Source: Pristiophorus japonicus (Eukaryota). Taken from it: a stretch of DNA of 64,000 nucleotides. The stretch covers positions 248,001-312,000 of the forward strand of contig NW_027254485.1 in assembly GCF_044704955.1 (NCBI RefSeq). Reading direction: 5' to 3'. Made by a program: the position numbers and the translations under genes. Shown piece by piece: positions 13,730-37,530 of the stretch. The notes beneath the pieces are model-generated. The model saw only the letters and a list, made by a program, of their open reading frames with translations, was not told where the DNA came from and searched no databases. Positions within the stretch are counted from its first letter, which is position 1; the number at the start of each line of letters is the position of its first letter.

Positions 13730-15052
13730 GGGCCCATCGCGCCTGTACCAGCAATATCCGAGGTATCACATTATTCCCACTCCCCCCCCGCTCTTTCCCC
13801 AAAGCCCTGCAGATTTTCCCGATTCAAGTATTTATCCAATTCCCTTTGGAAAAACATGATTAAGTCTGCTCCCACCCCCTCTCCCAGACACTACATTCCA
13901 GATCTTAGCTTGTCGCTGAGGGTATAACAACATTTTTTTTGCTAAATTCCTCATCTTCCCCCTGGATTTTTTGCCAATTGAATTCTATCTGTGACCTCTG
14001 GCCACCCACCCTCCCGGCAGTGGTAACAGTTTCCCCCATCCACTGAACCCCTCACAATCTGGCACACATCCATTACATTCCCCCACGGTATGTGTGGGAT
14101 AGAGTGTACACAGAGGGAGGGTACAGCCCATGGTGTAAATGGGGATAGAGTGTGCACAGAGGGAGGGTCAGCCCACAGTGTGTGGGGATAGAGTGTACAC
14201 AGAGGGAGGGGGTACAGCCCACAGTGTGTGTGGGGATAGAATGTGCACAGAGGGAGCGGGTACAGCCCACGGTGTGTGTGGGGATAGAGTGCACACAGAG
14301 GGAGGGTACAGTCCACGGTGTGTGTGGGGATAGAGTGTACACAGAGGGAGGGGGTACAGTGCACGGTGTATATGGGGATAGAGTGCATGCAGAGGGAGGG
14401 TACAGCCCACGGTGTTTGTGGGGATAGAGTGTACACAGAGGGAGGGTACAGCCCACGGTGTGTGGGGATAGAGTGTACACAGAGGGAGGGTACAGCCCAC
14501 GGTGTGTGGGGATAGAGTGCACACAGAGGGAGGGTACAGCTCACGGTGTGTGGGGATAGAGTGTACACAGAGGGAGGGTACAGCACACGGTGTGTGGGGA
14601 GAGAGTGTACACAGAGGGAGGGTACAGCCCACGGTGTGTGGGGATAGAGTGTACACAGAGGGAGGGTACAGCTCACGGTGTGTGGGACACATCCATTACA
14701 TTCCCCCCTGAACCTTCTCTGCTGTACAGAAGGAGAACAATCCCAGCTTCTGTGGTCGCCCCATGTCACTGAAGCCCCTAATCCATTTCAGTAACTCTCC
14801 CCTGCGGCCTCTCCATGGCCTTGAATTCCTTGGTCCAGTGCGGCTCCGGCAATCCGCCACAATCCACCAGCTGGGGCCTGGCCGGTGATTTACGGCGGTT
14901 GTGGGGAATAACTCCCTTGCCTTTGTGCTCTACGCCTCGGTTTATAAAGCCCAGGATCCCGAGTGCTTTTTACTGAAAAATCTCGGCCACTTGTCCTGCT
15001 GCCCTTCAAAGGTTTGTGTTCACAAACCCACCGGTCTCCTTGGTCCCTGCAA
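13730..15052 (-). mobile_element. Old degenerate CR1 fragment (interrupted at 14085-14686; continues at ~37381-37425 beyond the 24-bp array)
   Basis: Minus strand reads ...HKPLK...KALGILGFINRGVEHKGKGVI..., homologous to KANGMLAFIARGFEYRGREV in the younger CR1 copies of this window. Confidence 0.8.
14085..14686. repeat. ~45-bp minisatellite (gggatagagtgtacacagagggagggtacagcccacggtgtgtg), flanked by a 21-bp direct repeat
   Basis: acacatccattacattccccc at 14064-14084 and 14687-14707. Confidence 0.92.
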
Positions 15053-18000
15053 CCCTGTAATAGTGCACCATTCACCCCCTGTAATAGGGCACCATTCACC
15101 CCCTGTAATAAGGCATAATTCCCTCCCTGTAATAGGGCACATTCATCCCCTGTAATAGGGCACATTCATCCCCTGTAATAGGGCACCATTCACCCCCTGT
15201 AATAGAGCACCATTCACCCCCTGTAATAGGGCACCATTCACCTCCTGTAATAGGGCAAAATTCACCCCCTGTAATAGGGCACCATTCACCCCCTGTAATA
15301 GGACACATTCATCCCCTGTAATAGGGCACATTCACCCCCTGTAATAGGGCACCATTCACCCCCTGTAATAGGGCACCATTCACCCCCTGTAATAGGGCAC
15401 CATTCACCCCCTGTAATAGGGCTCCATTCACCCCCTGTAATAGGGCTCCATTCACCCCCTGTAATAGGGCACCATTCACCCCCTGTAATAGGGCACCATT
15501 CACCTCCTGTAATAGGGCACCATTCACCCCCTGTAATAGGGCACCATTCACCCCCTGTAATAGGGCACCATTCACCCCCTGTAATAGGGCACCATTCACC
15601 CCCTGTAATAGGGCACAATCATCCCCTGTAATAGGGCACATTCATCCCCTGTAATAGGGCACCATTCACCCCCTGTAATAGGGCACCATTCCCCCCCTGT
15701 AATAGGGCACTATTCCCCCCCTGTAATAGGGCACATTCACACCCTGTAATAGGGCTTCATTCTCCCCCTGTAATAGGGCGCCATTCACCGCCTGTAATAG
15801 GGCTCCATTCCCCCTGTAATAGGGCACCATTCACCCCCTGTAATAGGGCACCATTCACCTCTTGTAATAGGGCACCATTCACACCCTGTAATAGGGCACC
15901 ATTCACCCCCTATAATAGGGCACCATTCACCTCCTGTAATAGGGCACCATTCACCCCCTGTAATAGGGCACCATTCACCCCCTGTAATAGGGCACATTCA
16001 CCTCCTGTAATAGGGCACCATTCACCCCCTGTAATAGGGCACCATTCACCCCCTGTAATAGGGCACCATTCACCCCCTGTAATAGGGCACCATTCACCCC
16101 CTGTAATAGGGCACCATTCACCCCCTGCAATAGGGCTCCATTCACCCCCTGTAATAGGGCTCCATTCACCCCCTGTAATAGGGCACCATTCACCCCCTGT
16201 AATAGGGCACCATTCACCTCCTGTAATAGGGCACCATTCACACCCTGTAATAGGGCACCATTCACCCCCTGTAATAGGGCACCTTTCACCCCCTGTAATA
16301 GGGCACCATTCACCCCTGTAATAGGACTCCATTCACCCCCTGTAATAGGGCACCATTCACCCCCTGTAATAGGGCACCATTCACCCCCTGTAATAGGGCA
16401 CATTCACCTCCTGTAATAGGGCACCATTCACCCCCTGTAATAGGGCACCATTCACCCCCTGTAATAGGGCACCATTCACCCCCTGTAATAGGGCACCATT
16501 CACCCCCTGTAATAGGGCACAATTCACCCCCTGTAATAGGGCACCATTCACCTCCTGTAATACGGCACCATTCACCCCCTGTAATAGGGCACCATTCACC
16601 CCCTGTAATACGGCACCATTCACCCCCTGTAATCGGGCACCATTCACCCCCTGTAATCGGGCACCATTCACCCCCTGTAATAGGGCACCATTCACCCCCT
16701 GTAATAGGGCACCATTCACCCCCTGTAATAGGGCACCATTCACCCCCTGTAATAGGGCTCCATTCACCCCCTGTAATAGGGCTCCATTCACCCCCTGTAA
16801 GAGGGCACCATTCACCCCCTGTAATAGGGCACCATTCACCTCCTGTAATAGGGCACCATTCACCCCCTGTAATAGGGCACCATTCACCCCCTGTAATAGG
16901 GCACCATTCACCCCCTGTAATAGGGCACCATTCACCCCCTGTAATAGGGCACAATCATCCCCTGTAATAGGGCACATTCATCCCCTGTAATAGGGCACCA
17001 TTCACCCCCTGTAATAGGGCACCATTCCCCCCCTGTAATAGGGCACTATTCCCCCCCTGTAATAGGGCACATTCACACCCTGTAATAGGGCTTCATTCTC
17101 CCCCTGTAATAGGGCGCCATTCACCGCCTGTAATAGGGCTCCATTCCCCCTGTAATAGGGCACCATTCACCCCCTGTAATAGGGCACCATTCACCTCTTG
17201 TAATAGGGCACCATTCACCCCCTGTAATAGGGCACCATTCACCCCCTATAATAGTGCACCATTCACCTCCTGTAATAGGGCACCATTCACCCCCTGTAAT
17301 AGGGCACCATTCACCCCCTGTAATAGGGCACATTCACCTCCTGTAATAGGGCACCATTCACCCCCTGTAATAGGGCACCATTCACCCCCTGTAATAGGGC
17401 ACCATTCACCCCCTGTAATAGGGCACCATTCACCCCCTGTAATAGGGCACCATTCACCCCCTGTAATAGGGCACCATTCACCTCTTGTAATAGGGCACCA
17501 TTCACCCCCTGTAATAGGGCACCATTCACCCCCTGTAATAGGGCACCATTCACCCCCTGTAATAGGGCACCATTCACCCCCTGTAATAGGGCACCATTCA
17601 CCCCCTGTAATAGGGCACCATTCAGCCCCTATAATAGGGCACCATTCACCTCCTGTAATAGGGCACCATTCACCCCCTGTAATAGGGCACCATTCACCCC
17701 CTGTAATAGGGCACATTCACCTCCTGTAATAGGGCACCATTCACCCCCTGTAATAGGGCACAATTCACCCCCTGTAATAGGGCACCATTCACCTCCTGTA
17801 ATACGGCACCATTCACCCCCTGTAATAGGGCACCATTCACCCCCTGTAATAGGGCACAATTCACCCCCTGTAATAGGGCACCATTCACCTCCTGTAATAC
17901 GGCACCATTCACCCCCTGTAATAGGGCACCATTCACCCCCTGTAATACGGCACCATTCACCCCCTGTAATCGGGCACCATTCACCCCCTGTAATCGGGCA

Positions 18001-21000
18001 CCATTCACCCCCTGTAATAGGGCACCATTCACCCCCTGTAATAGGGCACCATTCACCCCCTGTAATAGGGCACCATTCACCCCCTGTAATAGGGCTCCAT
18101 TCACCCCCTGTAATAGGGCTCCATTCACCCCCTGTAATAGGGCACCATTCACCCCCTGTAATAGGGCACCATTCACCTCCTGTAATAGGGCACCATTCAC
18201 CCCCTGTAATAGGGCACCATTCACCCCCTGTAATAGGGCACCATTCACCCCCTGTAATAGGGCACCATTCACCCCCTGTAATAGGGCACAATCATCCCCT
18301 GTAATAGGGCACATTCATCCCCTGTAATAGGGCACCATTCACCCCCTGTAATAGGGCACCATTCCCCCCCTGTAATAGGGCACTATTCCCCCCCTGTAAT
18401 AGGGCACATTCACACCCTGTAATAGGGCTTCATTCTCCCCCTGTAATAGGGCGCCATTCACCGCCTGTAATAGGGCTCCATTCCCCCTGTAATAGGGCAC
18501 CATTCACCCCCTGTAATAGGGCACCATTCACCTCTTGTAATAGGGCACCATTCACCCCCTGTAATAGGGCACCATTCACCCCCTATAATAGTGCACCATT
18601 CACCTCCTGTAATAGGGCACCATTCACCCCCTGTAATAGGGCACCATTCACCCCCTGTAATAGGGCACATTCACCTCCTGTAATAGGGCACCATTCACCC
18701 CCTGTAATAGGGCACCATTCACCCCCTGTAATAGGGCACCATTCACCCCCTGTAATAGGGCACCATTCACCCCCTGTAATAGGGCACCATTCACCCCCTG
18801 TAATAGGGCACCATTCACCTCTTGTAATAGGGCACCATTCACCCCCTGTAATAGGGCACCATTCACCCCCTGTAATAGGGCACCATTCACCCCCTGTAAT
18901 AGGGCACCATTCACCCCCTGTAATAGGGCACCATTCACCCCCTGTAATAGGGCACCATTCAGCCCCTATAATAGGGCACCATTCACCTCCTGTAATAGGG
19001 CACCATTCACCCCCTGTAATAGGGCACCATTCACCCCCTGTAATAGGGCACATTCACCTCCTGTAATAGGGCACCATTCACCCCCTGTAATAGGGCACCA
19101 TTCACCCCCTGTAATAGGGCACCATTCACCCCCTGTAATAGGGCACCATTCACCCCCTGTAATAGGGCACCATTCACCCCCTGTAATAGGGCACCATTCA
19201 CCTCTTGTAATAGGGCACCATTCACCCCCTGTAATAGGGCACCATTCACCCCCTGTAATAGGGCACCATTCACCCCCTGTAATAGGGCACCATTCACCCC
19301 CTGTAATAGGGCACCATTCACCCCCTGTAATAGGGCACCATTCACCCCCTGTAATAGGGCACCATTCACCCCCTGTAATAGGGCACCATTCACCCCCTGT
19401 AATAGGGCACCATTCACCCCCTGTAATAGGGCACCATTCACCTCTTGTAATAGGGCACCATTCACCCCCTGTAATAGGGCACCATTCACCCCCTGTAATA
19501 GGGCACCATTCACCCCCTGTAATAGGGCACCATTCACCCCCTGTAATAGGGCACCATTCACGCCCTGTAATAGTGCACCATTCACCCCTTGTAATAGGGC
19601 ACCATTCACCCCCTGTAATAGGGCACCATTCACCTCCTGTAATATGGCACCATTCACCTCCTGTAATAGAGCACCATTCACCCCCTGTAATAGGGCTCCA
19701 TTCACCCCCTGTAATAGGGCTCCATTCACCCCCTGTAATAGGGCACCATTCACTCCCTGTAATAGGGCACCATTCACCCCGTGTAATAGGGCTCCATTCA
19801 CCCCCTGTAATAGGGCACCATTCAGCCCCTGTAATAGGACACCATTCACCCCCTGTAATCGGGCACCATTCACCCCCTGTAATAGGGCTCCATTCACCCC
19901 CTGTAATAGGGCACCATTCACCCCCTGTAATAGGGCACCATTCACCCCCTATAATAGGGCACCATTCACCTCCTGTAATAGGGCACCATTCACCCCCTGT
20001 AATAGGGCACCATTCACCCCCTGTAATAGGGCACATTCACCTCCTGTAATAGGGCACCATTCACCCCCTGTAATAGGGCACCATTCACCCCCTGTAATAG
20101 GGCACCATTCACCTCTTGTAATAGGGCACCATTCACACCCTGTAATAGGGCACCATTCACCCCCTGTAATAGGGCACCTTTCACCCCCTGTAATAGGGCA
20201 CCATTCACCCCTGTAATAGGACTCCATTCACCCCCTGTAATAGGGCACCATTCACCCCCTGTAATAGGGCACCATTCACCCCCTGTAATAGGGCACATTC
20301 ACCTCCTGTAATAGGGCACCATTCACCTCCTGTAATAGGGCACCATTCACCCCGTGTAATAGGGCTCCATTCACCCCCTGTAATAGGGCACCATTCAGCC
20401 CCTGTAATAGGACACCATTCACCCCCTGTAATCGGGCACCATTCACCCCCTGTAATAGGGCTCCATTCACCCCCTGTAATAGGGCACCATTCACCCCCTG
20501 TAATAGGGCACCATTCACCCCCTATAATAGGGCACCATTCACCTCCTGTAATAGGGCACCATTCACCCCCTGTAATAGGGCACCATTCACCCCCTGTAAT
20601 AGGGCACATTCACCCCCTGTAATAGGGCACCTTTCACCCCCTGTAATAGGGCACCATTCACCCCTGTAATAGGACTCCATTCACCCCCTGTAATAGGGCA
20701 CCATTCACCCCCTGTAATAGGGCACCATTCACCCCCTGTAATAGGGCACATTCACCTCCTGTAATAGGGCACCATTCACCTCCTGTAATAGGGCACCATT
20801 CACCCCGTGTAATAGGGCTCCATTCACCCCCTGTAATAGGGCACCATTCAGCCCCTGTAATAGGACACCATTCACCCCCTGTAATCGGGCACCATTCACC
20901 CCCTGTAATAGGGCTCCATTCACCCCCTGTAATAGGGCACCATTCACCCCCTGTAATAGGCACCATTCACCCCCTGTAATAGGGCACCATTCACCCCCTG

Positions 21001-24000
21001 TAATAGGGCACCATTCACCCCCTGTAATAGGGCACCATTCACCCCCTGTAATAGGGCACCATTCACCCCCTGTAATAGGGCACCATTCACCTCTTGTAAT
21101 AGGGCACCATTCACCCCCTGTAATAGGGCACCATTCACCCCCTGTAATAGGGCACCATTCACCCCCTGTAATAGGGCACCATTCACCCCCTGTAATAGGG
21201 CACCATTCACGCCCTGTAATAGTGCACCATTCACCCCTTGTAATAGGGCACCATTCACCCCCTGTAATAGGGCACCATTCACCTCCTGTAATATGGCACC
21301 ATTCACCTCCTGTAATAGAGCACCATTCACCCCCTGTAATAGGGCTCCATTCACCCCCTGTAATAGGGCTCCATTCACCCCCTGTAATAGGGCACCATTC
21401 ACTCCCTGTAATAGGGCACCATTCACCCCGTGTAATAGGGCTCCATTCACCCCCTGTAATAGGGCACCATTCAGCCCCTGTAATAGGACACCATTCACCC
21501 CCTGTAATCGGGCACCATTCACCCCCTGTAATAGGGCTCCATTCACCCCCTGTAATAGGGCACCATTCACCCCCTGTAATAGGGCACCATTCACCCCCTA
21601 TAATAGGGCACCATTCACCTCCTGTAATAGGGCACCATTCACCCCCTGTAATAGGGCACCATTCACCCCCTGTAATAGGGCACATTCACCTCCTGTAATA
21701 GGGCACCATTCACCCCCTGTAATAGGGCACCATTCACCCCCGGTAATAGGGCACCATTCACCTCTTGTAATAGGGCACCATTCACACCCTGTAATAGGGC
21801 ACCATTCACCCCCTGTAATAGGGCACCTTTCACCCCCTGTAATAGGGCACCATTCACCCCTGTAATAGGACTCCATTCACCCCCTGTAATAGGGCACCAT
21901 TCACCCCCTGTAATAGGGCACCATTCACCCCCTGTAATAGGGCACATTCACCTCCTGTAATAGGGCACCATTCACCTCCTGTAATAGGGCACCATTCACC
22001 CCGTGTAATAGGGCTCCATTCACCCCCTGTAATAGGGCACCATTCAGCCCCTGTAATAGGACACCATTCACCCCCTGTAATCGGGCACCATTCACCCCCT
22101 GTAATAGGGCTCCATTCACCCCCTGTAATAGGGCACCATTCACCCCCTGTAATAGGGCACCATTCACCCCCTATAATAGGGCACCATTCACCTCCTGTAA
22201 TAGGGCACCATTCACCCCCTGTAATAGGGCACCATTCACCCCCTGTAATAGGGCACATTCACCTCCTGTAATAGGGCACCATTCACCCCCTGTAATAGGG
22301 CACCATTCACCCCCTGTAATAGGGCACCATTCACCTCTTGTAATAGGGCACCATTCACACCCTGTAATAGGGCACCATTCACCCCCTGTAATAGGGCACC
22401 TTTCACCCCCTGTAATAGGGCACCATTCACCCCTGTAATAGGACTCCATTCACCCCCTGTAATAGGGCACCATTCACCCCCTGTAATAGGGCACCATTCA
22501 CCCCCTGTAATAGGGCACATTCACCTCCTGTAATAGGGCACCATTCACCCCCTGTAATAGGGCACCATTCACCCCCTGTAATAGGGCACCATTCACCCCC
22601 TGTAATAGGGCACCATTCACCCCCTGTAATAGGGCACCATTCACCCCCTGTAATAGGGCACCATTCACCCCCTGTAATAGTGCACCATTCACCCCCTGTA
22701 AAAGGGCACCATTCACCCCCTGTAATAGGGCACCATTCCCCCCCTGTAATAGGGCACCATTCACCCCCTGTAATAGGACTCCATTCACCCCCTGTAATAG
22801 GGCACCATTCACCCCCTGTAATAGGGCACCATTCACCCCCTGTAATAGGGCACCATTCACCCCCTGTAATAGGGCACAATTCACCCCCTGTAATAGGGCA
22901 CCATTCACCTCCTGTAATACGGCACCATTCACCCCCTGTAATAGGGCACCATTCACCCCCTGTAATACGGCACCATTCACCCCCTGTAATCGGGCACCAT
23001 TCACCCCCTGTAATCGGGCACCATTCACCCCCTGTAATAGGGCACCATTCACCCCCTGTAATAGGGCACCATTCACCCCCTGTAATAGGGCACCATTCAC
23101 CCCCTGTAATAGGGCTCCATTCACCCCCTGTAATAGGGCACCATTCACCCCCTGTAATAGGGCACCATTCACCCACTGTAATAGTGCACCATTCACCCCT
23201 TGTAAAAGGGCACCATTCACTCCCTGTAATAGGGCACCATTCACCCCCTGTAATAGGGCACCATTCACCCCCTGTAATAGGACTCCATTCACCCCCTGTA
23301 ATAGGGCACCATTCACCCCCTGTAATAGGGCACCATTCACCCCCTGTAATAGGGCACCATTCACCCCCTGTAATAGGGCACCATTCACCCCCTGTAATAG
23401 GGCACCATTCACCTCCTGTAATACGGCACCATTCACCCCCTGTAATAGGGCACCATTCAACCCCTGTAATAGGGCACCATTCACCCCCTGTAATATGGCT
23501 CCATTCACCCCCTGTAATAGGGCTCCATTCACCCCCTGTAATAGGGCACCATTCACCCCCTGTAATAGGGCTCCGTTCACCCCCTGTAATCGGGCACCAT
23601 TCACCCCGTGTAATCGGGCACCATTCTCCCCCTGTAATAGGGCTCCATTCACCCCCTGTAATAGGGCACCATTCACCCCCTGTAATACGGCACCATTCAC
23701 CCCCTGTAATCGGGCACCATTCACCCCCTGTAATAGGGCACCATTCACCCCCTGTAATAGGGCACCTTTCACCCCCTGTAATAGGGCACCATTCACCCCC
23801 TGTAATAGGGCACCATTCACCCCCTATAATAGGGCACCATTCACCTCCTGTAATAGGGCACCATTCACCCCCTGTAATAGGGCACCATTCACCCCCTGTA
23901 ATAGGGCACCATTCACCCCCTGTAATAGGGCACCATTCACCTCCTGTAATAGGGCACCATTCAACCCCTGTAATAGGGCACCATTCACCCCCTGTAATAG

Positions 24001-27000
24001 GGCTCCATTCACCCCCTGTAATAGGGCTCCATTCACCCCCTGTAATAGGGCACCATTCACCCCCTGTAATAGGGCACCATTCACCCCCTGTAATAGGGCA
24101 CCATTCACCCCCTATAATAGGGCACCATTCACCTCCTGTAAAAGGGCACCATTCACCCCCTGTAATAGGGCACCATTCACCCCCTGTAATAGGGCACCAT
24201 TCACCTCCTGTAATAGGGCACCATTCAACCCCTGTAATAGGGCACCATTCACCCCCTGTAATAGGGCTCCATTCACCCCCTGTAATAGGGCTCCATTCAC
24301 TCCCTGTAATAGGGCTCCATTCACCCCCTGTAATAGGGCTCCATTCACCCCCTGTAATAGGGCACCATTCACTCCCTGTAATAGGGCACCATTCACCCCG
24401 TGTAATAGGGCTCCATTCACCCCCTGTAATAGGGCACCATTCAGCCCCTGTAATAGGACACCATTCACCCCCTGTAATAGGGCACCATTCACCCCCTGTA
24501 ATAGGGCTCCATTCACCCCCTGTAATAGGGCACCATTCACCCCCTGTAATAGGGCACCATTCACCCCCTATAATAGGGCACCATTCACCTCCTGTAATAG
24601 GGCACCATTCACCCCCTGTAATAGGGCACCATTCTCCCCCTGTAATAGGGCACATTCACCTCCTGTAATAGGGCACCATTCACCCCCTGTAATAGGGCAC
24701 CTTTCACCCCCTGTAATAGGGCACCATTCACCCCCTGTAATAGGGCACCATTCACCCCCTGTAATAGGGCACCATTCACCCCCTGTAATAGGGCACCATT
24801 CACCTCTTGTAATAGGGCACCATTCACCCCCTGTAATAGGGCACCATTCACCCCCTGTAATAGGGCACCTTTCACCCCCTGTAATAGGGCACCATTCACC
24901 CCTGTAATAGGACTCCATTCACCCCCTGTAATAGGGCACCATTCACCCCCTGTAATAGGGCACCATTCACCCCCTGTAATAGGACTCCATTCACCCCCTG
25001 TAATAGGGCACCATTCACCCCCTGTAATAGGGCACCATTCACCCCCTGTAATAGGGCACCATTCACCCCCTGTAATAGGGCACCATTCACCCCCTGTAAT
25101 AGGGCACCATTCACCTCCTGTAATACGGCACCATTCACCCCCTGTAATAGGGCACCATTCAACCCCTGTAATAGGGCACCATTCACCCCCTGTAATATGG
25201 CTCCATTCACCCCCTGTAATAGGGCTCCATTCACCCCCTGTAATAGGGCACCATTCACCCCCTGTAATAGGGCTCCGTTCACCCCCTGTAATCGGGCACC
25301 ATTCACCCCGTGTAATCGGGCACCATTCTCCCCCTGTAATAGGGCTCCATTCACCCCCTGTAATAGGGCACCATTCACCCCCTGTAATACGGCACCATTC
25401 ACCCCCTGTAATCGGGCACCATTCACCCCCTGTAATAGGGCACCATTCACCCCCTGTAATGGGGCACCTTTCACCCCCTGTAATCGGGCACCATTCACCC
25501 CCTGTAATAGGGCACCGTTCACCCCCTGTAATAGGGCACCGTTCACCCCCTGTAATAGGGCACCATTCACCCCCTGTAATAGGGCACCATTCACCCCCTG
25601 TAATAGGGCTCCATTCACCCCCTGTAATAGGGCACCATTCACCCCCTGTAATACGGCACCATTCACCCCCTGTAATAGGGCACCATTCACCCCCTGTAAT
25701 AGGGCACCATTCACCCCCTGTAATAGGGCACCATTCACCCCCTATAATAGGGCACCATTCACCCCCTGTAATAGGGCACATTCACCCCCTGTAATAGGGC
25801 ACCATTCACCCCCTGTAATACGGCACCATTCACCCCCTGTAATCGGGCACCATTCACCCCCTGTAATAGGGCACCGTTCACCCCCTGTAATAGGGCACCT
25901 TTCACCCCCTGTAATCGGGCACCATTCACCCCCTGTAATAGGGCACCGTTCACCCCCTGTAATAGGGCACCATTCACCCCCTGTAATAGGGCACCATTCA
26001 CCCCCTGTAATAGGGCACCATTCACCCCCTGTAATAGGGCTCCATTCACCCCCTGTAATAGGGCACCATTCACCCCCTGTAATACGGCACCATTCACCCC
26101 CTGTAATAGGGCACCATTCACCCCCTGTAATAGGGCACCATTCACCCCCTGTAATAGGGCTCCATTCACCCCCTGTAATAGGGTACCATTCACCCCCTGT
26201 AATACGGCACCATTCACCCCCTGTAATAGGGCACCATTCACCCCCTGTAATAGGGCACCATTCACCCCCTGTAATAGGGCACCATTCAACCCCTGTAATA
26301 GGGCACCATTCACCCCCTGTAATAGGGCTCCATTCACCCCCTGTAATAGGGCTCCATTCACCCCCTGTAATAGGGCACCATTCACCCCCTGTAATAGGGC
26401 ACCATTCACCCCCTGTAATAGGGCACCATTCACCCCCTATAATAGGGCACCATTCACCTCCTGTAAAAGGGCACCATTCACCCCCTGTAATAGGGCACCA
26501 TTCACCCCCTGTAATTGGGCACCATTCACCCCCTGTAATAGGGCACCATTCACCTCCTGTAATAGGGCACCATTCAACCCCTGTAATAGGGCACCATTCA
26601 CCCCCTGTAATAGGGCTCCATTCACCCCCTGTAATAGGGCTCCATTCACTCCCTGTAATAGGGCTCCATTCACCCCCTGTAATAGGGCTCCATTCACCCC
26701 CTGTAATAGGGCACCATTCACTCCCTGTAATAGGGCACCATTCACCCCGTGTAATAGGGCTCCATTCACCCCCTGTAATAGGGCACCATTCAGCCCCTGT
26801 AATAGGACACCATTCACCCCCTGTAATAGGGCACCTTTCACCCCCTGTAATAGGGCACCATTCACCCCTGTAATAGGACTCCATTCACCCCCTGTAATAG
26901 GGCACCATTCACCCCCTGTAATAGGGCACCATTCACCCCCTGTAATAGGGCACCATTCACCCCCTGTAATAGGGCACCATTCACCCCCTGTAATAGGGCA

Positions 27001-30000
27001 CCATTCACCCCCTGTAATAGGGCACCATTCACCCCCTGTAATAGGGCACCATTCACCCCCTGTAATAGTGCACCATTCACCCCCTGTAAAAGGGCACCAT
27101 TCACCCCCTGTAATAGGGCACCATTCACCCCCTGTAATAGGGCACCATTCACCCCCTGTAATAGGACTCCATTCACCCCCTGTAATAGGGCACCATTCAC
27201 CCCCTGTAATAGGGCACCATTCACCCCCTGTAATAGGGCACCATTCACCCCCTGTAATAGGGCACAATTCACCCCCTGTAATAGGGCACCATTCACCTCC
27301 TGTAATACGGCACCATTCACCCCCTGTAATAGGGCACCATTCACCCCCTGTAATACGGCACCATGCACCCCCTGTAATCGGGCACCATTCACCCCCTGTA
27401 ATCGGGCACCATTCACCCCCTGTAATAGGGCACCATTCACCCCCTGTAATAGGGCACCATTCACCCCCTGTAATAGGGCACCATTCACCCCCTGTAATAG
27501 GGCACCATTCACCCCCTGTAATAGGGCTCCATTCACCCCCTGTAATAGGGCACCATTTACCCCCTGTAATAGGGCACCATTCACCCACTGTAATAGTGCA
27601 CCATTCACCCCTTGTAAAAGGGCACCATTCACCCCCTGTAATAGGGCACCATTCACCCCCTGTAATAGGGCACCATTCACCCCCTGTAATAGGACTCCAT
27701 TCACCCCCTGTAATAGGGCACCATTCACCCCCTGTAATAGGGCACCATTCACCCCCTGTAATAGGGCACCATTCACCCCCTGTAATAGGGCACCATTCAC
27801 CCCCTGTAATAGGGCACCATTCACCTCCTGTAATACGGCACCATTCACCCCCTGTAATAGGGCACCATTCAACCCCTGTAATAGGGCACCATTCACCCCC
27901 TGTAATATGGCTCCATTCACCCCCTGTAATAGGGCTCCATTCACCCCCTGTAATAGGGCACCATTCACCCCCTGTAATAGGGCTCCGTTCACCCCCTGTA
28001 ATCGGGCACCATTCACCCCGTGTAATCGGGCACCATTCTCCCCCTGTAATAGGGCTCCATTCACCCCCTGTAATAGGGCACCATTCACCCCCTGTAATAC
28101 GGCACCATTCACCCCCTGTAATCGGGCACCATTCACCCCCTGTAATAGGGCACCATTCACCCCCTGTAATAGGGCACCTTTCACCCCCTGTAATCGGGCA
28201 CCATTCACCCCCTGTAATAGGGCACCGTTCACCCCCTGTAATAGGGCACCATTCACCCCCTGTAATAGGGCACCATTCACCCCCTGTAATAGGGCACCAT
28301 TCACCCCCTGTAATAGGGCTCCATTCACCCCCTGTAATAGGGCACCATTCACCCCCTGTAATAGGGCACCATTCACCCCCTGTAATAGGGCACCATTCAC
28401 CCCCTGTAATAGGGCACCATTCACCCCCTATAATAGGGCACCATTCACCTCCTGTAATAGGGCACCATTCACCCCCTGTAATAGGGCACCATTCACCCCC
28501 TGTAATAGGGCACCATTCACCCCCTGTAATAGGGCACCATTCACCTCCTGTAATAGGGCACCATTCACCCCCTGTAATAGGGCACCATTCACCCCCTGTA
28601 ATAGGGCACCATTCACCCCCTATAATAGGGCACCATTCACCTCCTGTAAAAGGGCACCATTCACCCCCTGTAATAGGGCACCATTCACCCCCTGTAATAG
28701 GGCACCATTCACCCCCTGTAATAGGGCACCATTCACCTCCTGTAATAGGGCACCATTCAACCCCTGTAATAGGGCACCATTCACCCCCTGTAATAGGGCT
28801 CCATTCACCCCCTGTAATAGGGCTCCATTCACTCCCTGTAATAGGGCTCCATTCACCCCCTGTAATAGGGCTCCATTCACCCCCTGTAATAGGGCACCAT
28901 TCACTCCCTGTAATAGGGCACCATTCACCCCGTGTAATAGGGCTCCATTCACCCCCTGTAATAGGGCACCATTCAGCCCCTGTAATAGGACACCATTCAC
29001 CCCCTGTAATAGGGCACCATTCACCCCCTGTAATAGGGCTCCATTCACCCCCTGTAATAGGGCACCATTCACCCCCTGTAATAGGGCACCATTCACCCCC
29101 TATAATAGGGCACCATTCACCTCCTGTAATAGGGCACCATTCACCCCCTGTAATAGGGCACCATTCACCCCCTGTAATAGGGCACATTCACCTCCTGTAA
29201 TAGGGCACCATTCACCCCCTGTAATAGGGCACCATTCACCCCCTGTAATAGGGCACCATTCACCCCCTGTAATAGGGCACCATTCACCCCCTGTAATAGG
29301 GCACCATTCACCCCCTGTAATAGGGCACCATTCACCTCTTGTAATAGGGCACCATTCACCCCCTGTAATAGGGCACCATTCACCCCCTGTAATAGGGCAC
29401 CTTTCACCCCCTGTAATAGGGCACCATTCACCCCTGTAATAGGACTCCATTCACCCCCTGTAATAGGGCACCATTCACCCCCTGTAATAGGGCACCATTC
29501 ACCCCCTGTAATAGGACTCCATTCACCCCCTGTAATAGGGCACCATTCACCCCCTGTAATAGGGCACCATTCACCCCCTGTAATAGGGCACCATTCACCC
29601 CCTGTAATAGGGCACCATTCACCTCCTGTAATACGGCACCATTCACCCCCTGTAATAGGGCACCATTCAACCCCTGTAATAGGGCACCATTCACCCCCTG
29701 TAATATGGCTCCATTCACCCCCTGTAATAGGGCTCCATTCACCCCCTGTAATAGGGCACCATTCACCCCCTGTAATAGGGCTCCGTTCACCCCCTGTAAT
29801 CGGGCACCATTCACCCCGTGTAATCGGGCACCATTCTCCCCCTGTAATAGGGCTCCATTCACCCCCTGTAATAGGGCACCATTCACCCCCTGTAATACGG
29901 CACCATTCACCCCCTGTAATCGGGCACCATTCACCCCCTGTAATAGGGCACCATTCACCCCCTGTAATAGGGCACCTTTCACCCCCTGTAATCGGGCACC

Positions 30001-33000
30001 ATTCACCCCCTGTAATAGGGCACCGTTCACCCCCTGTAATAGGGCACCATTCACCCCCTGTAATAGGGCACCATTCACCCCCTGTAATAGGGCACCATTC
30101 ACCCCCTGTAATAGGGCTCCATTCACCCCCTGTAATAGGGCACCATTCACCCCCTGTAATACGGCACCATTCACCCCCTGTAATAGGGCACCATTCACCC
30201 CCTGTAATAGGGCACCATTCACCCCCTGTAATAGGGCACCATTCACCCCCTATAATAGGGCACCATTCACCTCCTGTAATAGGGCACCATTCACCCCCTG
30301 TAATAGGGCACCATTCACCCCCTGTAATAGGGCACCATTCACCCCCTGTAATAGGGCACCATTCACCTCCTGTAATAGGGCACCATTCAACCCCTGTAAT
30401 AGGGCACCATTCACCCCCTGTAATAGGGCTCCATTCACCCCCTGTAATAGGGCTCCATTCACCCCCTGTAATAGGGCACCATTCACCCCCTGTAATAGGG
30501 CACCATTCACCCCCTGTAATAGGGCACCATTCACCCCCTATAATAGGGCACCATTCACCTCCTGTAAAAGGGCACCATTCACCCCCTGTAATAGGGCACC
30601 ATTCACCCCCTGTAATAGGGCACCATTCACCCCCTGTAATAGGGCACCATTCACCTCCTGTAATAGGGCACCATTCAACCCCTGTAATAGGGCACCATTC
30701 ACCCCCTGTAATAGGGCTCCATTCACCCCCTGTAATAGGGCTCCATTCACTCCCTGTAATAGGGCTCCATTCACCCCCTGTAATTGGGCTCCAGTCACCC
30801 CCTGTAATAGGGCACCATTCACTCCCTGTAATAGGGCACCATTCACCCCGTGTAATAGGGCTCCATTCACCCCCTGTAATAGGGCACCATTCAGCCCCTG
30901 TAATAGGACACCATTCACCCCCTGTAATAGGGCACCATTCACCCCCTGTAATAGGGCTCCATTCACCCCCTGTAATAGGGCACCATTCACCCCCTGTAAT
31001 AGGACTCCATTCACCCCCTGTAATAGGGCACCATTCACCCCCTGTAATAGGGCACCATTCACCCCCTGTAATAGGGCACCATTCACCCCCTGTAATAGGG
31101 CACCATTCACCCCCTGTAATAGGGCACCATTCACCTCCTGTAATACGGCACCATTCACCCCCTGTAATAGGGCACCATTCAACCCCTGTAATAGGGCACC
31201 ATTCACCCCCTGTAATATGGCTCCATTCACCCCCTGTAATAGGGCTCCATTCACCCCCTGTAATAGGGCACCATTCACCCCCTGTAATAGGGCTCCGTTC
31301 ACCCCCTGTAATCGGGCACCATTCACCCCGTGTAATCGGGCACCATTCTCCCCCTGTAATAGGGCTCCATTCACCCCCTGTAATAGGGCACCATTCACCC
31401 CCTGTAATACGGCACCATTCACCCCCTGTAATCGGGCACCATTCACCCCCTGTAATAGGGCACCATTCACCCCCTGTAATAGGGCACCTTTCACCCCCTG
31501 TAATCGGGCACCATTCACCCCCTGTAATAGGGCACCGTTCACCCCCTGTAATAGGGCACCATTCACCCCCTGTAATAGGGCACCATTCACCTCCTGTAAT
31601 AGGGCACCATTCACCCCCTGTAATAGGGCTCCATTCACCCCCTGTAATAGGGCACCATTCACCCCCTGTAATACGGCACCATTCACCCCCTGTAATAGGG
31701 CACCATTCACCCCCTGTAATAGGGCACCATTCACCCCCTGTAATAGGGCACCATTCACCCCCTATAATAGGGCACCATTCACCTCCTGTAATAGGGCACC
31801 ATTCACCCCCTGTAATAGGGCACCATTCACCCCCTGTAATAGGGCACCATTCACCCCCTGTAATAGGGCACCATTCACCTCCTGTAATAGGGCACCATTC
31901 AACCCCTGTAATAGGGCACCATTCACCCCCTGTAATAGGGCTCCATTCACCCCCTGTAATAGGGCTCCATTCACCCCCTGTAATAGGGCACCATTCACCC
32001 CCTGTAATAGGGCACCATTCACCCCCTGTAATAGGGCACCATTCACCCCCTATAATAGGGCACCATTCACCTCCTGTAAAAGGGCACCATTCACCCCCTG
32101 TAATAGGGCACCATTCACCCCCTGTAATAGGGCACCATTCACCCCCTGTAATAGGGCACCATTCACCTCCTGTAATAGGGCACCATTCAACCCCTGTAAT
32201 AGGGCACCATTCACCCCCTGTAATAGGGCTCCATTCACCCCCTGTAATAGGGCTCCATTCACTCCCTGTAATAGGGCTCCATTCACCCCCTGTAATAGGG
32301 CTCCATTCACCCCCTGTAATAGGGCACCATTCACTCCCTGTAATAGGGCACCATTCACCCCGTGTAATAGGGCTCCATTCACCCCCTGTAATAGGGCACC
32401 ATTCAGCCCCTGTAATAGGACACCATTCACCCCCTGTAATAGGGCACCATTCACCCCCTGTAATAGGGCTCCATTCACCCCCTGTAATAGGGCACCATTC
32501 ACCCCCTGTAATAGGGCACCATTCACCCCCTATAATAGGGCACCATTCACCTCCTGTAATAGGGCACCATTCACCCCCTGTAATAGGGCACCATTCACCC
32601 CCTGTAATAGGGCACATTCACCTCCTGTAATAGGGCACCATTCACCCCCTGTAATAGGGCACCATTCACCCCCTGTAATAGGGCACCATTCACCCCCTGT
32701 AATAGGGCACCATTCATCCCCTGTAATAGGGCACCATTCACCCCCTGTAATAGGGCACCATTCACCTCTTGTAATAGGGCACCATTCACCCCCTGTAATA
32801 GGGCACCTTTCACCCCCTGTAATAGGGCACCATTCACCCCTGTAATAGGACTCCATTCACCCCCTGTAATAGGGCACCATTCACCCCCTGTAATAGGGCA
32901 CCATTCACCCCCTGTAATAGGACTCCATTCACCCCCTGTAATAGGGCACCATTCACCCCCTGTAATAGGGCACCATTCACCCCCTGTAATAGGGCACCAT

Positions 33001-36000
33001 TCACCCCCTGTAATAGGGCACCATTCACCCCCTGTAATAGGGCACCATTCACCTCCTGTAATACGGCACCATTCACCCCCTGTAATAGGGCACCATTCAA
33101 CCCCTGTAATAGGGCACCATTCACCCCCTGTAATATGGCTCCATTCACCCCCTGTAATAGGGCTCCATTCACCCCCTGTAATAGGGCACCATTCACCCCC
33201 TGTAATAGGGCTCCGTTCACCCCCTGTAATCGGGCACCATTCACCCCGTGTAATCGGGCACCATTCTCCCCCTGTAATAGGGCTCCATTCACCCCCTGTA
33301 ATAGGGCACCATTCACCCCCTGTAATACGGCACCATTCACCCCCTGTAATCGGGCACCATTCACCCCCTGTAATAGGGCACCATTCACCCCCTGTAATAG
33401 GGCACCTTTCACCCCCTGTAATCGGGCACCATTCACCCCCTGTAATAGGGCACCGTTCACCCCCTGTAATAGGGCACCATTCACCCCCTGTAATAGGGCA
33501 CCATTCACCCCCTGTAATAGGGCACCATTCACCCCCTGTAATAGGGCTCCATTCACCCCCTGTAATAGGGCTCCATTCACCCCCTGTAATAGGGCACCAT
33601 TCACCCCCTGTAATACGGCACCATTCACCCCCTGTAATAGGGCACCATTCACCCCCTGTAATAGGGCACCATTCACCCCCTGTAATAGGGCACCATTCAC
33701 CCCCTATAATAGGGCACCATTCACCTCCTGTAATAGGGCACCATTCACCCCCTGTAATAGGGCACCATTCACCCCCTGTAATAGGGCACCATTCACCCCC
33801 TGTAATAGGGCACCATTCACCTCCTGTAATAGGGCACCATTCAACCCCTGTAATAGGGCACCATTCACCCCCTGTAATAGGGCTCCATTCACCCCCTGTA
33901 ATAGGGCTCCATTCACCCCCTGTAATAGGGCACCATTCACCCCCTGTAATAGGGCACCATTCACCCCCTGTAATAGGGCACCATTCACCCCCTATAATAG
34001 GGCACCATTCACCTCCTGTAAAAGGGCACCATTCACCCCCTGTAATAGGGCACCATTCACCCCCTGTAATAGGGCACCATTCACCCCCTGTAATAGGGCA
34101 CCATTCACCTCCTGTAATAGGGCACCATTCAACCCCTGTAATAGGGCACCATTCACCCCCTGTAATAGGGCTCCATTCACCCCCTGTAATAGGGCTCCAT
34201 TCACTCCCTGTAATAGGGCTCCATTCACCCCCTGTAATTGGGCTCCATTCACCCCCTGTAATAGGGCACCATTCACTCCCTGTAATAGGTTACCATTCAC
34301 CCCGTGTAATAGGGCTCCATTCACCCCCTGTAATAGGGCACCATTCAGCCCCTGTAATAGGACACCATTCACCCCCTGTAATAGGGCACCATTCACCCCC
34401 TGTAATAGGGCTCCATTCACCCCCTGTAATAGGGCACCATTCACCCCCTGTAATAGGGCACCATTCACCCCCTGTAATAGGGCACATTCACCTCCTGTAA
34501 TAGGGCACCATTCACCCCCTGTAATAGGGCACCATTCACCCCCTGTAATAGGGCACATTCACCTCCTGTAATAGGGCACCATTCACCCCCTGTAATAGGG
34601 CACCATTCACCCCCTGTAATAGGGCACCATTCACCCCCTGTAATAGGGCACCATTCACCCCCTGTAATAGGGCACCATTCACCCCCTGTAATAGGGCACC
34701 ATTCACCTCTTGTAATAGGGCACCATTCACCCCCTGTAATAGGGCACCATTCACCCCCTGTAATAGGGCACCTTTCACCCCCTGTAATAGGGCACCATTC
34801 ACCCCTGTAATAGGACTCCATTCACCCCCTGTAATAGGGCACCATTCACCCCCTGTAATAGGGCACCATTCACCCCCTGTAATAGGACACCATTCACCCC
34901 CTGTAATAGGGCACCATTCACCCCCTGTAATAGGGCACCATTCACCCCCTGTAATAGGGCACCATTCACCCCCTGTAATAGTGCACCATTCACCCCCTGT
35001 AAAAGGGCACCATTCACCCCCTGTAATAGGGCACCATTCACCCCCTGTAATAGGGCACCATTCACCCCCTGTAATAGGACTCCATTCACCCCCTGTAATA
35101 GGGCACCATTCACCCCCTGTAATAGGGCACCATTCACCCCCTGTAATAGGGCACCATTCACCCCCTGTAATAGGGCACAATTCACCCCCTGTAATAGGGC
35201 ACCATTCACCTCCTGTAATACGGCACCATTCACCCCCTGTAATAGGGCACCATTCACCCCCTGTAATACGGCACCATTCACCCCCTGTAATCGGGCACCA
35301 TTCACCCCCTGTAATCGGGCACCATTCACCCCCTGTAATAGGGCACCATTCACCCCCTGTAATAGGGCACCATTCACCCCCTGTAATAGGGCACCATTCA
35401 CCCCCTGTAATAGGGCACCATTCACCCCCTGTAATAGGGCTCCATTCACCCCCTGTAATAGGGCACCATTCACCCCCTGTAATAGGGCACCATTCACCCA
35501 CTGTAATAGTGCACCATTCACCCCTTGTAAAAGGGCACCATTCACCCCCTGTAATAGGGCACCATTCACCCCCTGTAATAGGGCACCATTCACCCCCTGT
35601 AATAGGACTCCATTCACCCCCTGTAATAGGGCACCATTCACCCCCTGTAATAGGGCACCATTCACCCCCTGTAATAGGGCACCATTCACCCCCTGTAATA
35701 GGGCACCATTCACCTCCTGTAATACGGCACCATTCACCCCCTGTAATAGGGCACCATTCAACTCTTGTAATAGGGCACCATTCACCCCCTGTAATATGGC
35801 TCCATTCACCCCCTGTAATAGGGCTCCATTCACCCCCTGTAATAGGGCACCATTCACCCCCTGTAATAGGGCTCCGTTCACCCCCTGTAATCGGGCACCA
35901 TTCACCCCGTGTAATCGGGCACCATTCTCCCCCTGTAATAGGGCTCCATTCACCCCCTGTAATAGGGCACCATTCACCCCCTGTAATACGGCACCATTCA

Positions 36001-37390
36001 CCCCCTGTAATCGGGCACCATTCGCCCCCTGTAATAGGGCACCATTCACCCCCTGTAATAGGGCACCTTTCACCCCTTGTAATCGGGCACCGTTCACCCC
36101 CTGTAATAGGGCACCGTTCACCCCCTGTAATAGGGCACCATTCACCCCCTGTAATAGGGCACCATTCACCCCCTGTAATAGGGCACCATTCACCCCCTGT
36201 AATAGGGCTCCATTCACCCCCTGTAATAGGGCACCATTCACCCCCTGTAATACGGCACCATTCACCCCCTGTAATAGGGCACCATTCACCCCCTGTAATA
36301 GGGCACCATTCACCCCCTGTAATAGGGCACCATTCACCCCCTATAATAGGGCACCATTCACCTCCTGTAATAGGGCACCATTCACCCCCTGTAATAGGGC
36401 ACCATTCACCCCCTGTAATAGGGCACCATTCACCCCCTGTAATAGGGCACCATTCACCTCCTGTAATAGGGCACCATTCAACCCCTGTAATAGGGCACCA
36501 TTCACCCCCTGTAATAGGGCTCCATTCACCCCCTGTAATAGGGCTCCATTCACCCCCTGTAATAGGGCACCATTCACCCCCTGTAATAGGGCACCATTCA
36601 CCCCCTGTAATAGGGCACCATTCACCCCCTATAATAGGGCACCATTCACCTCCTGTAAAAGGGCACCATTCACCCCCTGTAATAGGGCACCATTCACCCC
36701 CTGTAATAGGGCACCATTCACCCCCTGTAATAGGGCACCATTCACCTCCTGTAATAGGGCACCATTCAACCCCTGTAATAGGGCACCATTCACCCCCTGT
36801 AATAGGGCTCCATTCACCCCCTGTAATAGGGCTCCATTCACCCCCTGTAATAGGGCACCATTCACCCCCTGTAATAGGGCACCATTCACCCCCTGTAATA
36901 GGGCACCATTCACCCCCTGTAATCGGGCTCCATTCACCCCTGTAATAGGGCTCCGTTCACCCCCTGTAATAGGGCACCATTCACCCCCTGTAATAGGGCA
37001 CCATTCACCCCCTGTAATAGGGCTCCATTCACCCCCTGTAATAGGGCACCATTCACCCCCTGTAATAGGGCACCATTCACCCCCTGTAATAGGGCACCAT
37101 TCAACCCCTGTAATCGGGCACCATTCACCCCCTGTAATAGGGCACCATTCACCCCCTGTAATAGGGCACCATTCACCCCCTGTAATAGGGCACCATTCAC
37201 CCCCTGTAATAAGGCATCATTCCCTCCCTGTAATAGGGCTCCATTCACCCCCTGTAATAGGGCACCATTCACTCCCTGTAATAGGGCACCATTCACCTCC
37301 TGTAATAGGGCTCCATTCACCCCCTGTAATAAGGCTCCATTCACCCCCTGTAATAGGGCACCATTCACTCCCTGTAATAGTGCGCCATTT
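15052..37390. repeat. ~22.3 kb tandem array of a 24-bp unit (ccattcaccccctgtaatagggca), roughly 930 copies, with higher-order structure
   Basis: Direct reading; copy number is length divided by 24; occasional 23-bp variants shift the frame. Confidence 0.98.
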
Positions 37391-37530
37391 AACTTGCGTT
37401 GCCTCTTTTGTCCGTCCTTCCTACACCGAGGTCAATGGTGAGGAGAATGGGGCGGAGCTACAAGTGGGCTGCCGATTGGCTGTCGGCGCCTCGAGTTCCC
37501 GCCCCACACCGATTGACACCATTTACTATT

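What the first reader, a model, noticed from the sequence alone, without database searches (positions are those of the whole stretch)
14940..37425. A 22-kb satellite born from eight codons inside a CR1 LINE ORF2; the LINE resumes on the other side
Seen: on the minus strand, unique sequence right of the array reads R-Q-R-K-L-N-G-A-L-L-Q-G. The array is (VNGALLQG)n. Unique sequence left of it continues ...HKPLK...KALGILGFINRGVEHKGKGVI. The young CR1 copies in this window read YYLNGDRLGKGEVQRDLGV..SLK..KANGMLAFIARGFEYRGREV at the equivalent position. Inference: one 24-bp piece of a dead antisense retrotransposon was amplified ~900-fold in place, inflating the CH1-CH2 intron to 29.9 kb. This is an unusually clean record of satellite birth inside an antibody gene.
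Basis: partly seen in the sequence, partly recalled or inferred. Interest (0 to 1): 0.8.

Follow-up and report, generated by a model that had tools for sequence, protein, structure and literature searches.

The report
LINE-born 22-kb repeat in antibody-gene intron
About 930 head-to-tail copies of a 24-base unit fill three quarters of an intron of an antibody heavy-chain gene, and the unit was most likely copied in place from eight codons at the broken front end of a dead CR1-type jumping gene; it is a neat example of an already known way in which satellite DNA arises.

Summary
A 24-bp unit repeats about 930 times over 15052-37392 (22.3 kb, 94% match). That is 75% of a 29,872-bp intron between two Ig C1-set exons.

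The left flank is a decayed minus-strand CR1-like ORF2 tail (profile E 7e-15). The last array unit plus the next 48 nt align without gaps to the collinear place in CR1:
- DNA: this is the best of all offsets in four young copies (z 4.6-5.4).
- Protein: empirical P is 3e-5 for the 24 residues and about 1e-3 for the unit alone.

Read word depth matches this one array, so it is not a genome-wide satellite. Rare unit variants are shared only by the two array ends, and 2-kb blocks inside are 98-99% alike. Both fit growth in place.

Not supported: "the LINE resumes on the other side". Beyond the terminal, degenerate unit, the right flank shows no CR1 similarity. The array therefore sits at or within about 40 bp of the LINE's 5' truncation.

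"IgW" was not verified. The only named relative is an IgNAR chain at 39% identity.

Satellites derived from LINE ORF2 are already described, so this is a new member of a known kind. First-reader notes of this scan report other LINE-born satellites elsewhere in this genome; I did not check them.

The parts
15052..37392 (-). Array of about 930 units of 24 bp. On the minus strand, in LINE codon phase, it reads GTG AAT GGT GCC CTA TTA CAG GGG = VNGALLQG. It has 45 units of 23 bp and internal block duplications.
   Evidence: TRF; unit census; 2-kb blocks at 98-99% identity at lags of 1.34, 1.51, 1.65, 3.43 and 6.09 kb
15052..15075 (-). Left terminal unit (VNGALLQG). It carries the rare TAATAGTGC variant and aligns to CR1 ORF2 columns VNGRVLGS / LNGDRLGK.
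37369..37392 (-). Right terminal unit (LNGALLQG), 4 of 24 bases off consensus. It carries the same rare TAATAGTGC variant.
15001..15051 (-). LINE ORF2 remnant directly after the array (CRDQGDRWVCEHKPLKG), collinear with CR1 'VEEQRDLGVYVHRSLKV'.
   Evidence: HMMER places 15075-15001 on profile positions 233-257; 16-residue flank PSSM P 2.6e-5; ungapped DNA best offset in four CR1 copies
14763..15038 (-). LINE ORF2 remnant in another frame (KALGILGFINRGVEHKGKG...PQLVDC...AMERPQGRVTEM), profile positions 246-334.
   Evidence: 41.1 bits, E 6.9e-15; tblastn E 3e-8; reads show 14921-14983 is an abundant CR1 core
14064..14707 (.). A 44-bp minisatellite (14082-14686) interrupting the LINE. It is flanked by a perfect 21-bp direct repeat of LINE sequence. 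The same satellite recurs at 43336-45028.
   Evidence: LINE profile positions run on across it
13801..14032 (-). C-terminal end of the LINE ORF2 remnant (profile positions 374-445 of 446).
37393..37529 (.). Right flank, unassigned, with no detectable CR1 similarity. A 39-bp satellite follows at 37530-40523.
   Evidence: the right junction is seen in read contigs
11227..11539 (+). Upstream Ig C1-set exon (CH1-like) with a GTGAGT donor.
   Evidence: Pfam C1-set E 5e-15; splice motifs
41412..41717 (+). Next Ig C1-set-like exon (306 nt) with a TTACAG acceptor and GTAAGT donor.

Best explanation
A CR1-like LINE inserted antisense into this intron as a 5'-truncated copy and then decayed.

A 24-bp piece at its 5' edge was duplicated in tandem. 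The piece is the eight codons equivalent to VNGRVLGS / LNGDRLGK of CR1 ORF2, just upstream of the QRDLGV..SLK motif. The cause was probably replication slippage or an unequal exchange.

Once a few copies existed, unequal sister-chromatid or homologue exchange amplified and homogenised them. This happened mostly in the interior and in blocks of 56 to about 250 units, up to about 930 units (22.3 kb).

The array has no evident function. Its effect is to quadruple the intron length.

What is shown:
- the array itself;
- the LINE identity of the left flank;
- collinearity of unit plus flank with CR1;
- single-locus abundance;
- the block structure and the layering of the array ends.

What is inferred:
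- the molecular mechanism of the first duplication and of later growth;
- neutrality.
For: 1. Left flank. A profile of nine shark and ray CR1-like ORF2 proteins hits 15038-14763 (41.1 bits, E 6.9e-15). Collinear pieces continue to 13801.

2. Profile placement of the unit. In the VNGALLQG frame HMMER itself places the native last unit plus flank, without gaps, on profile positions 233-257, immediately collinear.

3. Protein significance. The null was stop-free six-frame peptides of the window outside CR1 and the array. P is 3e-5 for the 24 residues, 2.6e-5 for the 16-residue flank, and 7e-4 to 1.8e-3 for the unit alone. Identity is 8-10 of 24 to each subfamily member, the same level as the significant downstream part (about 40%).

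4. DNA. The last unit plus 48 nt, slid without gaps along four young CR1 copies, has its global maximum at the collinear offset in all four (39, 39, 37 and 37 of 72; z 4.6-5.4). The unit alone scores 12-14 of 24.

5. Length. LNG to LK is 24 residues both in CR1 and in 'one unit + flank', so collapsing the array to one unit leaves no gap.

6. Abundance. Word depth of read contigs over array words, divided by the unique-flank depth, is about 430-520. The commonest 31-mers occur about 400 times in the assembly. Apart from satellite sequence itself, the only sequence running off the array part among the 12 listed loose ends is this array's own right flank.

7. Array ends. Both terminal units carry a variant present in only 12 of 931 units (chance about 2e-4). 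A compound variant occurs only twice, in the 3rd unit from the left and the 8th from the right. This layering is expected for an array whose present ends are its original ends.

8. No target-site duplication flanks the array, unlike the neighbouring 44-bp minisatellite.
Against: - The right flank beyond the terminal unit shows no CR1 similarity in any frame or at DNA level. Collinearity is therefore shown on one side only.
- The unit-only signal is moderate (P about 1e-3 for the pre-specified placement). In a scan of all placements the collinear one ranks 6th of 14,304 and 3rd of 12,288, not first.
- HMMER's own score for the unit-plus-flank segment is low (-4.2 bits, E 0.39).
- In the same window other arrays abut LINE 5' ends without being derived from them, and one minisatellite looks mobile.
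- The read evidence comes from one sample, possibly the one that was assembled.
Confidence: 0.8

Rival explanations
1. The array is unrelated to the LINE. Either it was inserted (a mobile or copied minisatellite, or a reintegrated circle), or it was already there and merely abuts the 5' truncation point of the LINE. In that case the resemblance of the unit to CR1 codons is chance.
For: - There is no CR1 signal right of the array.
- The CR1 copy at 51240-52060 is sharply truncated against a 21-bp array with no homology.
- The 44-bp minisatellite in the same LINE has a 21-bp direct repeat and a second copy at 43336-45028.
- Unit-only P is only about 1e-3.
Against: - It would need a 24-bp gap in the LINE exactly equal to the unit length, and a unit that starts with the expected (V/L)NG..L codons in the right frame and register.
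- There is no target-site duplication.
- The 24-mer is absent left of the LINE.
- Read depth fits one locus.
- The array ends share rare variants.
Confidence: 0.1
2. The tandem copies were first made during retrotransposition itself, by repeated template switching of the reverse transcriptase at the 5' end of a truncated RNA. They were only maintained and enlarged later by unequal exchange.
For: The array sits at or within about 40 bp of the LINE's 5' truncation point. First-reader notes report other LINE-attached satellites in this genome (unchecked).
Against: - Nothing in the sequence requires this.
- The layered ends and the young block duplications show growth long after insertion.
- The other two arrays tested, one abutting and one near the 5' end of a LINE in this window, are not LINE-derived.
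Confidence: 0.05
3. The array length is an assembly artefact: a much shorter array inflated by the assembler.
For: Long, nearly identical blocks are the kind of sequence that assemblers mishandle. No spanning long read was examined.
Against: Read-contig word depth over the consensus words is about 430-520 times the unique-flank depth, against about 400 occurrences in the assembly. Both junctions are seen in read contigs.
Confidence: 0.03

Closest known systems
Satellite DNAs derived from LINE ORF2 segments (PROsat of Phodopus roborovskii, Pvc20 of harbour seal, chicken HinfI repeat holding a partial CR1 ORF2), as listed in the review PMC9659126
   Same: A tandem array whose monomer is homologous to part of a non-LTR retrotransposon coding region. 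The chicken case also involves the CR1 family.
   Different: - The monomer here is only 24 bp (eight codons).
- By read depth the array is confined to one locus.
- It is still attached on one side to the parent LINE copy.
- It lies in an intron of an Ig heavy-chain gene.

The published cases are dispersed or heterochromatic. How their monomer lengths compare was not checked here.
Classical minisatellites (10-100-bp units, single-locus arrays that grow by slippage and unequal exchange)
   Same: The unit size, the single locus, the variant-unit interspersion, and the block duplications with more divergent array ends.
   Different: At 22 kb and about 930 units it is at the upper end of minisatellite size. 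The parent sequence of the unit can be named.
Tandem repeats native to CR1 3' UTRs (here the 26-bp array after the young CR1 copies at 5991-6616 and 8586-8783)
   Same: Tandem repeats physically associated with CR1 copies in the same window.
   Different: Those arrays are part of the element's 3' UTR and travel with each copy. The 24-mer comes from ORF2 codons of one decayed copy and is not carried by other copies.

Membership tests
TE-derived satellite DNA | Head-to-tail tandem array of a monomer | tested here: met
   TRF: 932.8 copies, period 24, 94% matches
TE-derived satellite DNA | Monomer homologous to a segment of a transposable element | tested here: met
   Unit at the collinear CR1 ORF2 columns: P 7e-4 to 1.8e-3 alone, 3e-5 with flank. 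DNA best offset in four CR1 copies, z 4.6-5.4. The strength for the unit alone is moderate.
TE-derived satellite DNA | High genomic abundance or several loci (classical satellite) | tested here: not met
   Read word depth equals what this one array contains, and no foreign flanks appear among the listed loose ends. It is better called a giant single-locus minisatellite.
CR1-clade LINE (the parent element) | Conserved ORF2 region C-terminal to the reverse transcriptase, collinear with CR1 proteins | tested here: met
   Profile hit E 6.9e-15 plus collinear C-terminal pieces to profile position 445 of 446. The young window copies have RVT_1. Their relatives are CR1-type proteins of rays, birds and turtles.
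CR1-clade LINE (the parent element) | Reverse transcriptase and endonuclease domains in this copy | tested here: not met
   This copy holds only profile positions 233-446. Nothing 5' of the array matches CR1, as expected of a 5'-truncated copy.
CR1-clade LINE (the parent element) | Clade assignment by RT phylogeny; 3' UTR hairpin and microsatellite tail | not tested
   No tree was built and the 3' end at 13690-13800 was not analysed.
Immunoglobulin heavy-chain constant region, class IgW | C1-set exons with phase-1 splice sites | tested here: met
   Pfam C1-set at 10975-11610, 54805-55689 (two) and 59311-59814. Exons of 313 and 306 nt with AG/GT motifs.
Immunoglobulin heavy-chain constant region, class IgW | Orthology to known IgW (omega/delta) chains | tested here: inconclusive
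   The only named hit within the allowed length range is IgNAR1 of Okamejei kenojei at 39% identity. Full-length IgW chains fall outside the tool's length window.

The most novel reading that the evidence does not exclude
This array is one instance of a recurrent, lineage-specific process. In this cartilaginous-fish genome, short pieces at the ends of LINE copies (ORF2 codons or 3' termini) are repeatedly amplified into locus-specific satellites of 10-35 kb. That would point to a LINE-linked trigger, such as RT template switching at truncated 5' ends or a LINE sequence that promotes replication slippage, rather than random minisatellite birth.
Probability: 0.15. Interest if true: 0.6.

Novelty: new member of a known kind. 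Interest (0 to 1): 0.35.

Why it matters
The origin of a satellite monomer can rarely be read directly, because most arrays have lost their parent sequence and their original ends. Here the parent LINE copy is still attached on one side. The array appears confined to one locus, and its ends keep older unit variants. It is therefore a usable textbook example of the path from TE fragment to tandem duplication to block-wise growth.

It also shows how a single repeat can quadruple an intron of an antibody gene. If the scan's other notes of LINE-born satellites in this genome hold up, the genome would be a good system for asking why LINE fragments seed satellites.

Tried and rejected
- **Nucleotide BLAST of the flanks against the window.** It found only the 44-bp satellite. 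The LINE is too decayed for DNA hits to the young copies.
- **Broad CR1 profile dominated by bird and turtle sequences.** It did not reach the unit-plus-flank segment. A shark and ray subfamily profile did, but weakly, so I built an empirical null.
- **Right flank.** HMM searches, PSSM scans of three upstream segments and ungapped DNA comparison gave nothing significant. A 'GRT(D/K)K' hint at 37411-37425 scores below zero. I rejected it as evidence.
- **Right flank or 39-bp satellite as decayed 24-mer.** Local alignments are at the 95th percentile of shuffles. Not significant.
- **All LINE-adjacent arrays in the window as LINE-born.** The 39-mer and the 21-mer show no collinear placement. Rejected for this window.
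- **Protein word search with an array ORF holding two frames.** No hits.
- **The search of earlier findings by sequence.** Blank.
- **Literature search for LINE-derived satellites in sharks or skates.** Nothing specific.

Full report
**1. The observation**

Tandem Repeats Finder reports one array at 15053-37389 with period 24, 932.8 copies, 94% matches and no indel excess. The consensus is CCCTGTAATAGGGCACCATTCACC. Segmenting by unit gives about 930 units: 878 spacings of 24 bp and 45 of 23 bp. 391 units match the consensus exactly.

On the minus strand the sequence reads ...RQRKLNGALLQG, then (VNGALLQG)n, then CRDQGDRWVCEHKPLKG. One frame over it continues KALGILGFINRGVEHKGKGVI.... The young CR1 copy at 7763-8365 reads ...YYLNGDRLGKGEVQRDLGVMVRQSLKVGMQVQQAVKKANGMLAFIARGFEYRGREV.

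There is one qualification. LNGALLQG on the right is not unique sequence. It is the terminal array unit, 4 of 24 bases off consensus.

In LINE codon phase the array spans 15052-37392, or 22,341 bp.

**2. The gene context**

Pfam finds Ig C1-set domains in the ORFs at 10975-11610, 54805-55689 (two domains) and 59311-59814. A further C-domain-like exon lies near 41.4-41.7 kb.

From the splice motifs:
- The upstream exon is 11227-11539, with a CAG acceptor and a GTGAGT donor.
- The next exon is 41412-41717, with a TTACAG acceptor and a GTAAGT donor.
- The intron is 11540-41411, or 29,872 bp. The array makes up 75% of it.

The class IgW could not be confirmed. The only named relative within the search tool's length window is IgNAR1 of Okamejei kenojei at 39% identity.

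**3. The left flank is a dead CR1-like LINE**

A window CR1 ORF hits the flank by tblastn (E 3e-8, 36% over 86 residues).

The young window CR1 has its closest relatives in rays and skates (84% Leucoraja, 80% Mobula). CR1-type proteins of birds and turtles follow at about 46%.

The dead copy is closest (40-44%) to a shark and ray subfamily that reads ...HFGRTNKNAKYW VNGRVLGS VEEQRDLGVYVHRSLKVATQVDRAVKKAYGVLAFINRG.... A profile of nine such proteins gives these hits:
- 15038-14763 on profile positions 246-334, at 41.1 bits and E 6.9e-15.
- Collinear pieces at 14032-13889 (positions 374-416) and 13875-13801 (positions 421-445 of 446).

The 44-bp minisatellite at 14082-14686 interrupts the LINE between profile positions 334 and 374. 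It is flanked by a perfect 21-bp direct repeat of LINE sequence.

Read contigs pile up thousands deep on 14921-14983, the KALGILGFINRG DNA. This stretch is therefore the conserved core of an abundant repeat family.

**4. Is the unit the LINE's own eight codons?**

No joined sequence is needed for this test. The native stretch 15075-15001 holds the last unit plus the flank.

*Profile placement.* HMMER itself aligns VNGALLQGCRDQGDRWVCEHKPLKG without gaps to profile positions 233-257, exactly collinear with the strong hit. The score is low, at -4.2 bits and E 0.39.

*Empirical null.* I built a position-specific matrix of the 24 CR1 columns and scored it against all stop-free six-frame peptides of the window outside CR1 copies and the array:

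| Segment | P |
|---|---|
| All 24 residues | 3e-5 |
| 16-residue flank | 2.6e-5 |
| Unit alone, all 121 sequences | 7e-4 |
| Unit alone, nine subfamily sequences | 1.8e-3 |

Identity to individual subfamily members is 8-10 of 24. That is the same level as in the significant downstream part.

*DNA.* I slid the last unit plus 48 nt without gaps along four young CR1 copies. The global maximum is at the collinear offset in all four: 39, 39, 37 and 37 of 72, z 4.6-5.4, out of about 850 to 1,900 offsets each. The unit alone matches 12-14 of 24.

*Length.* LNG to LK is 24 residues both in CR1 and in 'one unit + flank'. Collapsing the array to one unit leaves neither a gap nor an insert.

*All placements.* Scanning every rotation and frame of the unit against all profile columns, the collinear placement ranks 6th of 14,304 and 3rd of 12,288. 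The unit-only signal is real but moderate. The 39-bp and 21-bp satellites served as controls and show no collinear placement.

**5. The right side**

Beyond the terminal unit (37393 onward) nothing matches CR1:
- There is no profile hit in any frame.
- PSSM scans of three upstream ORF2 segments give only negative scores.
- Ungapped DNA identity at or near the collinear register is within about 2 standard deviations of background.

A 39-bp satellite starts at 37530. The statement that the LINE resumes on the other side is therefore not supported.

The simplest reading is that the copy was 5'-truncated, as CR1 copies usually are (established knowledge), at or within about 40 bp of the seed codons.

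**6. Is the 24-mer a satellite from elsewhere?**

Four DNA runs of one sample hold the left junction. I laid the Logan contigs of two runs on 14690-15300.
- The unique flank has word depth of about 7 in one run and about 12 in the other.
- The bins covering consensus units sum to at most 3,151 and 6,549. That is 430-520 times the unique depth.
- The commonest 31-mers occur 390-409 times in the assembled array.
- Across bins, the observed ratios track the assembly's multiplicities from about 0.4 to 3 times where array words are common, and up to about 14 times in the low-copy edge bins, because contigs of 90% or more likeness are summed.
- One contig spans the left junction at single-copy depth.
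- Apart from satellite sequence itself, the only sequence that runs off the array part among the 12 listed loose ends is TAACTTGCGTTGCC..., the array's own right flank.

Twenty-three loose ends were not listed, and the sample may be the one that was assembled. This is therefore order-of-magnitude evidence. It argues against a large reservoir elsewhere and against an inflated assembly.

A protein word search with an array ORF found nothing.

**7. How the array grew**

Random neighbouring units are about 94% alike. Two-kilobase blocks recur at 98-99% identity at lags of 1.34, 1.51, 1.65, 3.43 and 6.09 kb. The unit-variant string shows the same long motifs repeated. Mean divergence from consensus is highest in the leftmost sixteenth of the array: 1.56 differences per unit against 0.7-0.9 in the right two-thirds.

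Both terminal units carry TAATAGTGC, a variant found in only 12 of 931 units (chance about 2e-4). The compound variant AAGGCAT[A/C]ATTCCCT occurs only twice, in the 3rd unit from the left end and the 8th from the right.

Old variants at both ends and young homogeneous blocks inside are what unequal exchange produces in an array whose present ends are its original ends. A fragment of a foreign array pasted in would not be expected to show this.

**8. Mechanism**

*Shown:* a decayed, truncated antisense CR1-like copy; a 24-bp unit collinear with its first eight retained codons; a single-locus array; block-wise growth.

*Inferred:* a first tandem duplication by slippage or unequal exchange, then amplification and homogenisation by unequal sister-chromatid or homologue exchange, with no function.

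On the sense strand of the gene each unit holds a GTAAT and a pyrimidine run followed by TAG|G. These motifs are read directly from the sequence. Whether they disturb splicing was not tested.

**9. Rivals**

- **Chance abutment or insertion (about 0.1).** This has local precedent. The CR1 copy at 51240-52060 is cut sharply against a 21-bp array with no homology, and the 44-bp minisatellite looks mobile. But it would require a 24-bp gap in the LINE equal to the unit length, filled by a unit with the right codons in the right register.
- **Birth during retrotransposition (about 0.05).** This cannot be excluded from one locus.
- **Assembly artefact (about 0.03).** This is contradicted by the word depth.

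**10. Comparison with what is known**

TE-derived satellites are well documented. They include LINE ORF2-derived ones (PROsat, Pvc20) and a chicken repeat that contains a partial CR1 ORF2 (review PMC9659126). This array is a new member of that kind.

Three features are unusual: the small unit, the retained parent copy and junction, and the location in an antibody-gene intron. By abundance it is a giant single-locus minisatellite rather than a classical satellite.

First-reader notes of this scan report other LINE-born satellites of 12-34 kb on other pieces of the same genome (s1-876589, s1-874873, s1-877323, s1-879186). I could not check them. If they are true, the phenomenon is recurrent in this genome.

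**11. Limits**

- There was no access to the rest of this genome or to relatives.
- No long reads were examined.
- The window has no N.

Noticed in passing
window 14064-14707: A 44-bp minisatellite (14082-14686) sits inside the same dead LINE, flanked by a perfect 21-bp direct repeat (ACACATCCATTACATTCCCCC) of LINE sequence. The same satellite forms a 1.7-kb array at 43336-45028 with different flanks. It looks like an inserted or copied minisatellite with a target-site duplication.
   Followed up: partly
window 51150-54000: A young CR1 copy (minus strand) is sharply 5'-truncated at about 52060, directly against a 1.9-kb G/C-rich 21-bp array (52072-53993) that has no homology to the missing CR1 sequence. 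A related 31-bp array (50914-51138) lies beyond its 3' end. This LINE probably inserted into a pre-existing array.
   Followed up: partly
window 5991-6616, 8586-8783, 10316-10513: A 26-bp tandem repeat (ATTAATCTCCCAATCAATGTCAGTGC) follows the young CR1 copies at 5073-5894 and 6655-8365, and occurs a third time. It appears to be a tandem repeat native to this CR1 family's 3' UTR.
   Followed up: no
window 11540-41411 and beyond: The Ig locus is packed with different tandem arrays: a C-rich repeat of about 20 bp (11888-13681), then 44-bp, 24-bp and 39-bp (37530-40523) arrays, then 45-bp, 34-bp, 42-bp (47073-48893), 6-bp, 21-bp, 33-bp and 20-bp arrays. This is an unusually satellite-rich gene region.
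   Followed up: no
window 37530-40523: The 39-bp satellite unit holds CACCAT and its reverse complement ATGGTG around a G-run. It shares GGGGGAATGGTG with the minus strand of the 24-mer and GCACCAT with the plus strand. The similarity is at the 95th percentile of shuffles, so it is not significant.
   Followed up: yes
window 42700-42900: On the minus strand, a CR1 3'-terminal motif (VVNRWNTFPQERV...) is followed directly by the middle of another CR1-like ORF2 (..KASRILGFINRGTEY..). This suggests nested or head-to-tail decayed CR1 copies.
   Followed up: no
window 14921-14983: Read contigs at 90% or more likeness pile up 5,000 to 24,000 deep on this 60-bp stretch of the dead LINE (the KA.GILGFINRG codons). 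This short core is conserved across a very abundant CR1 family in this genome.
   Followed up: no
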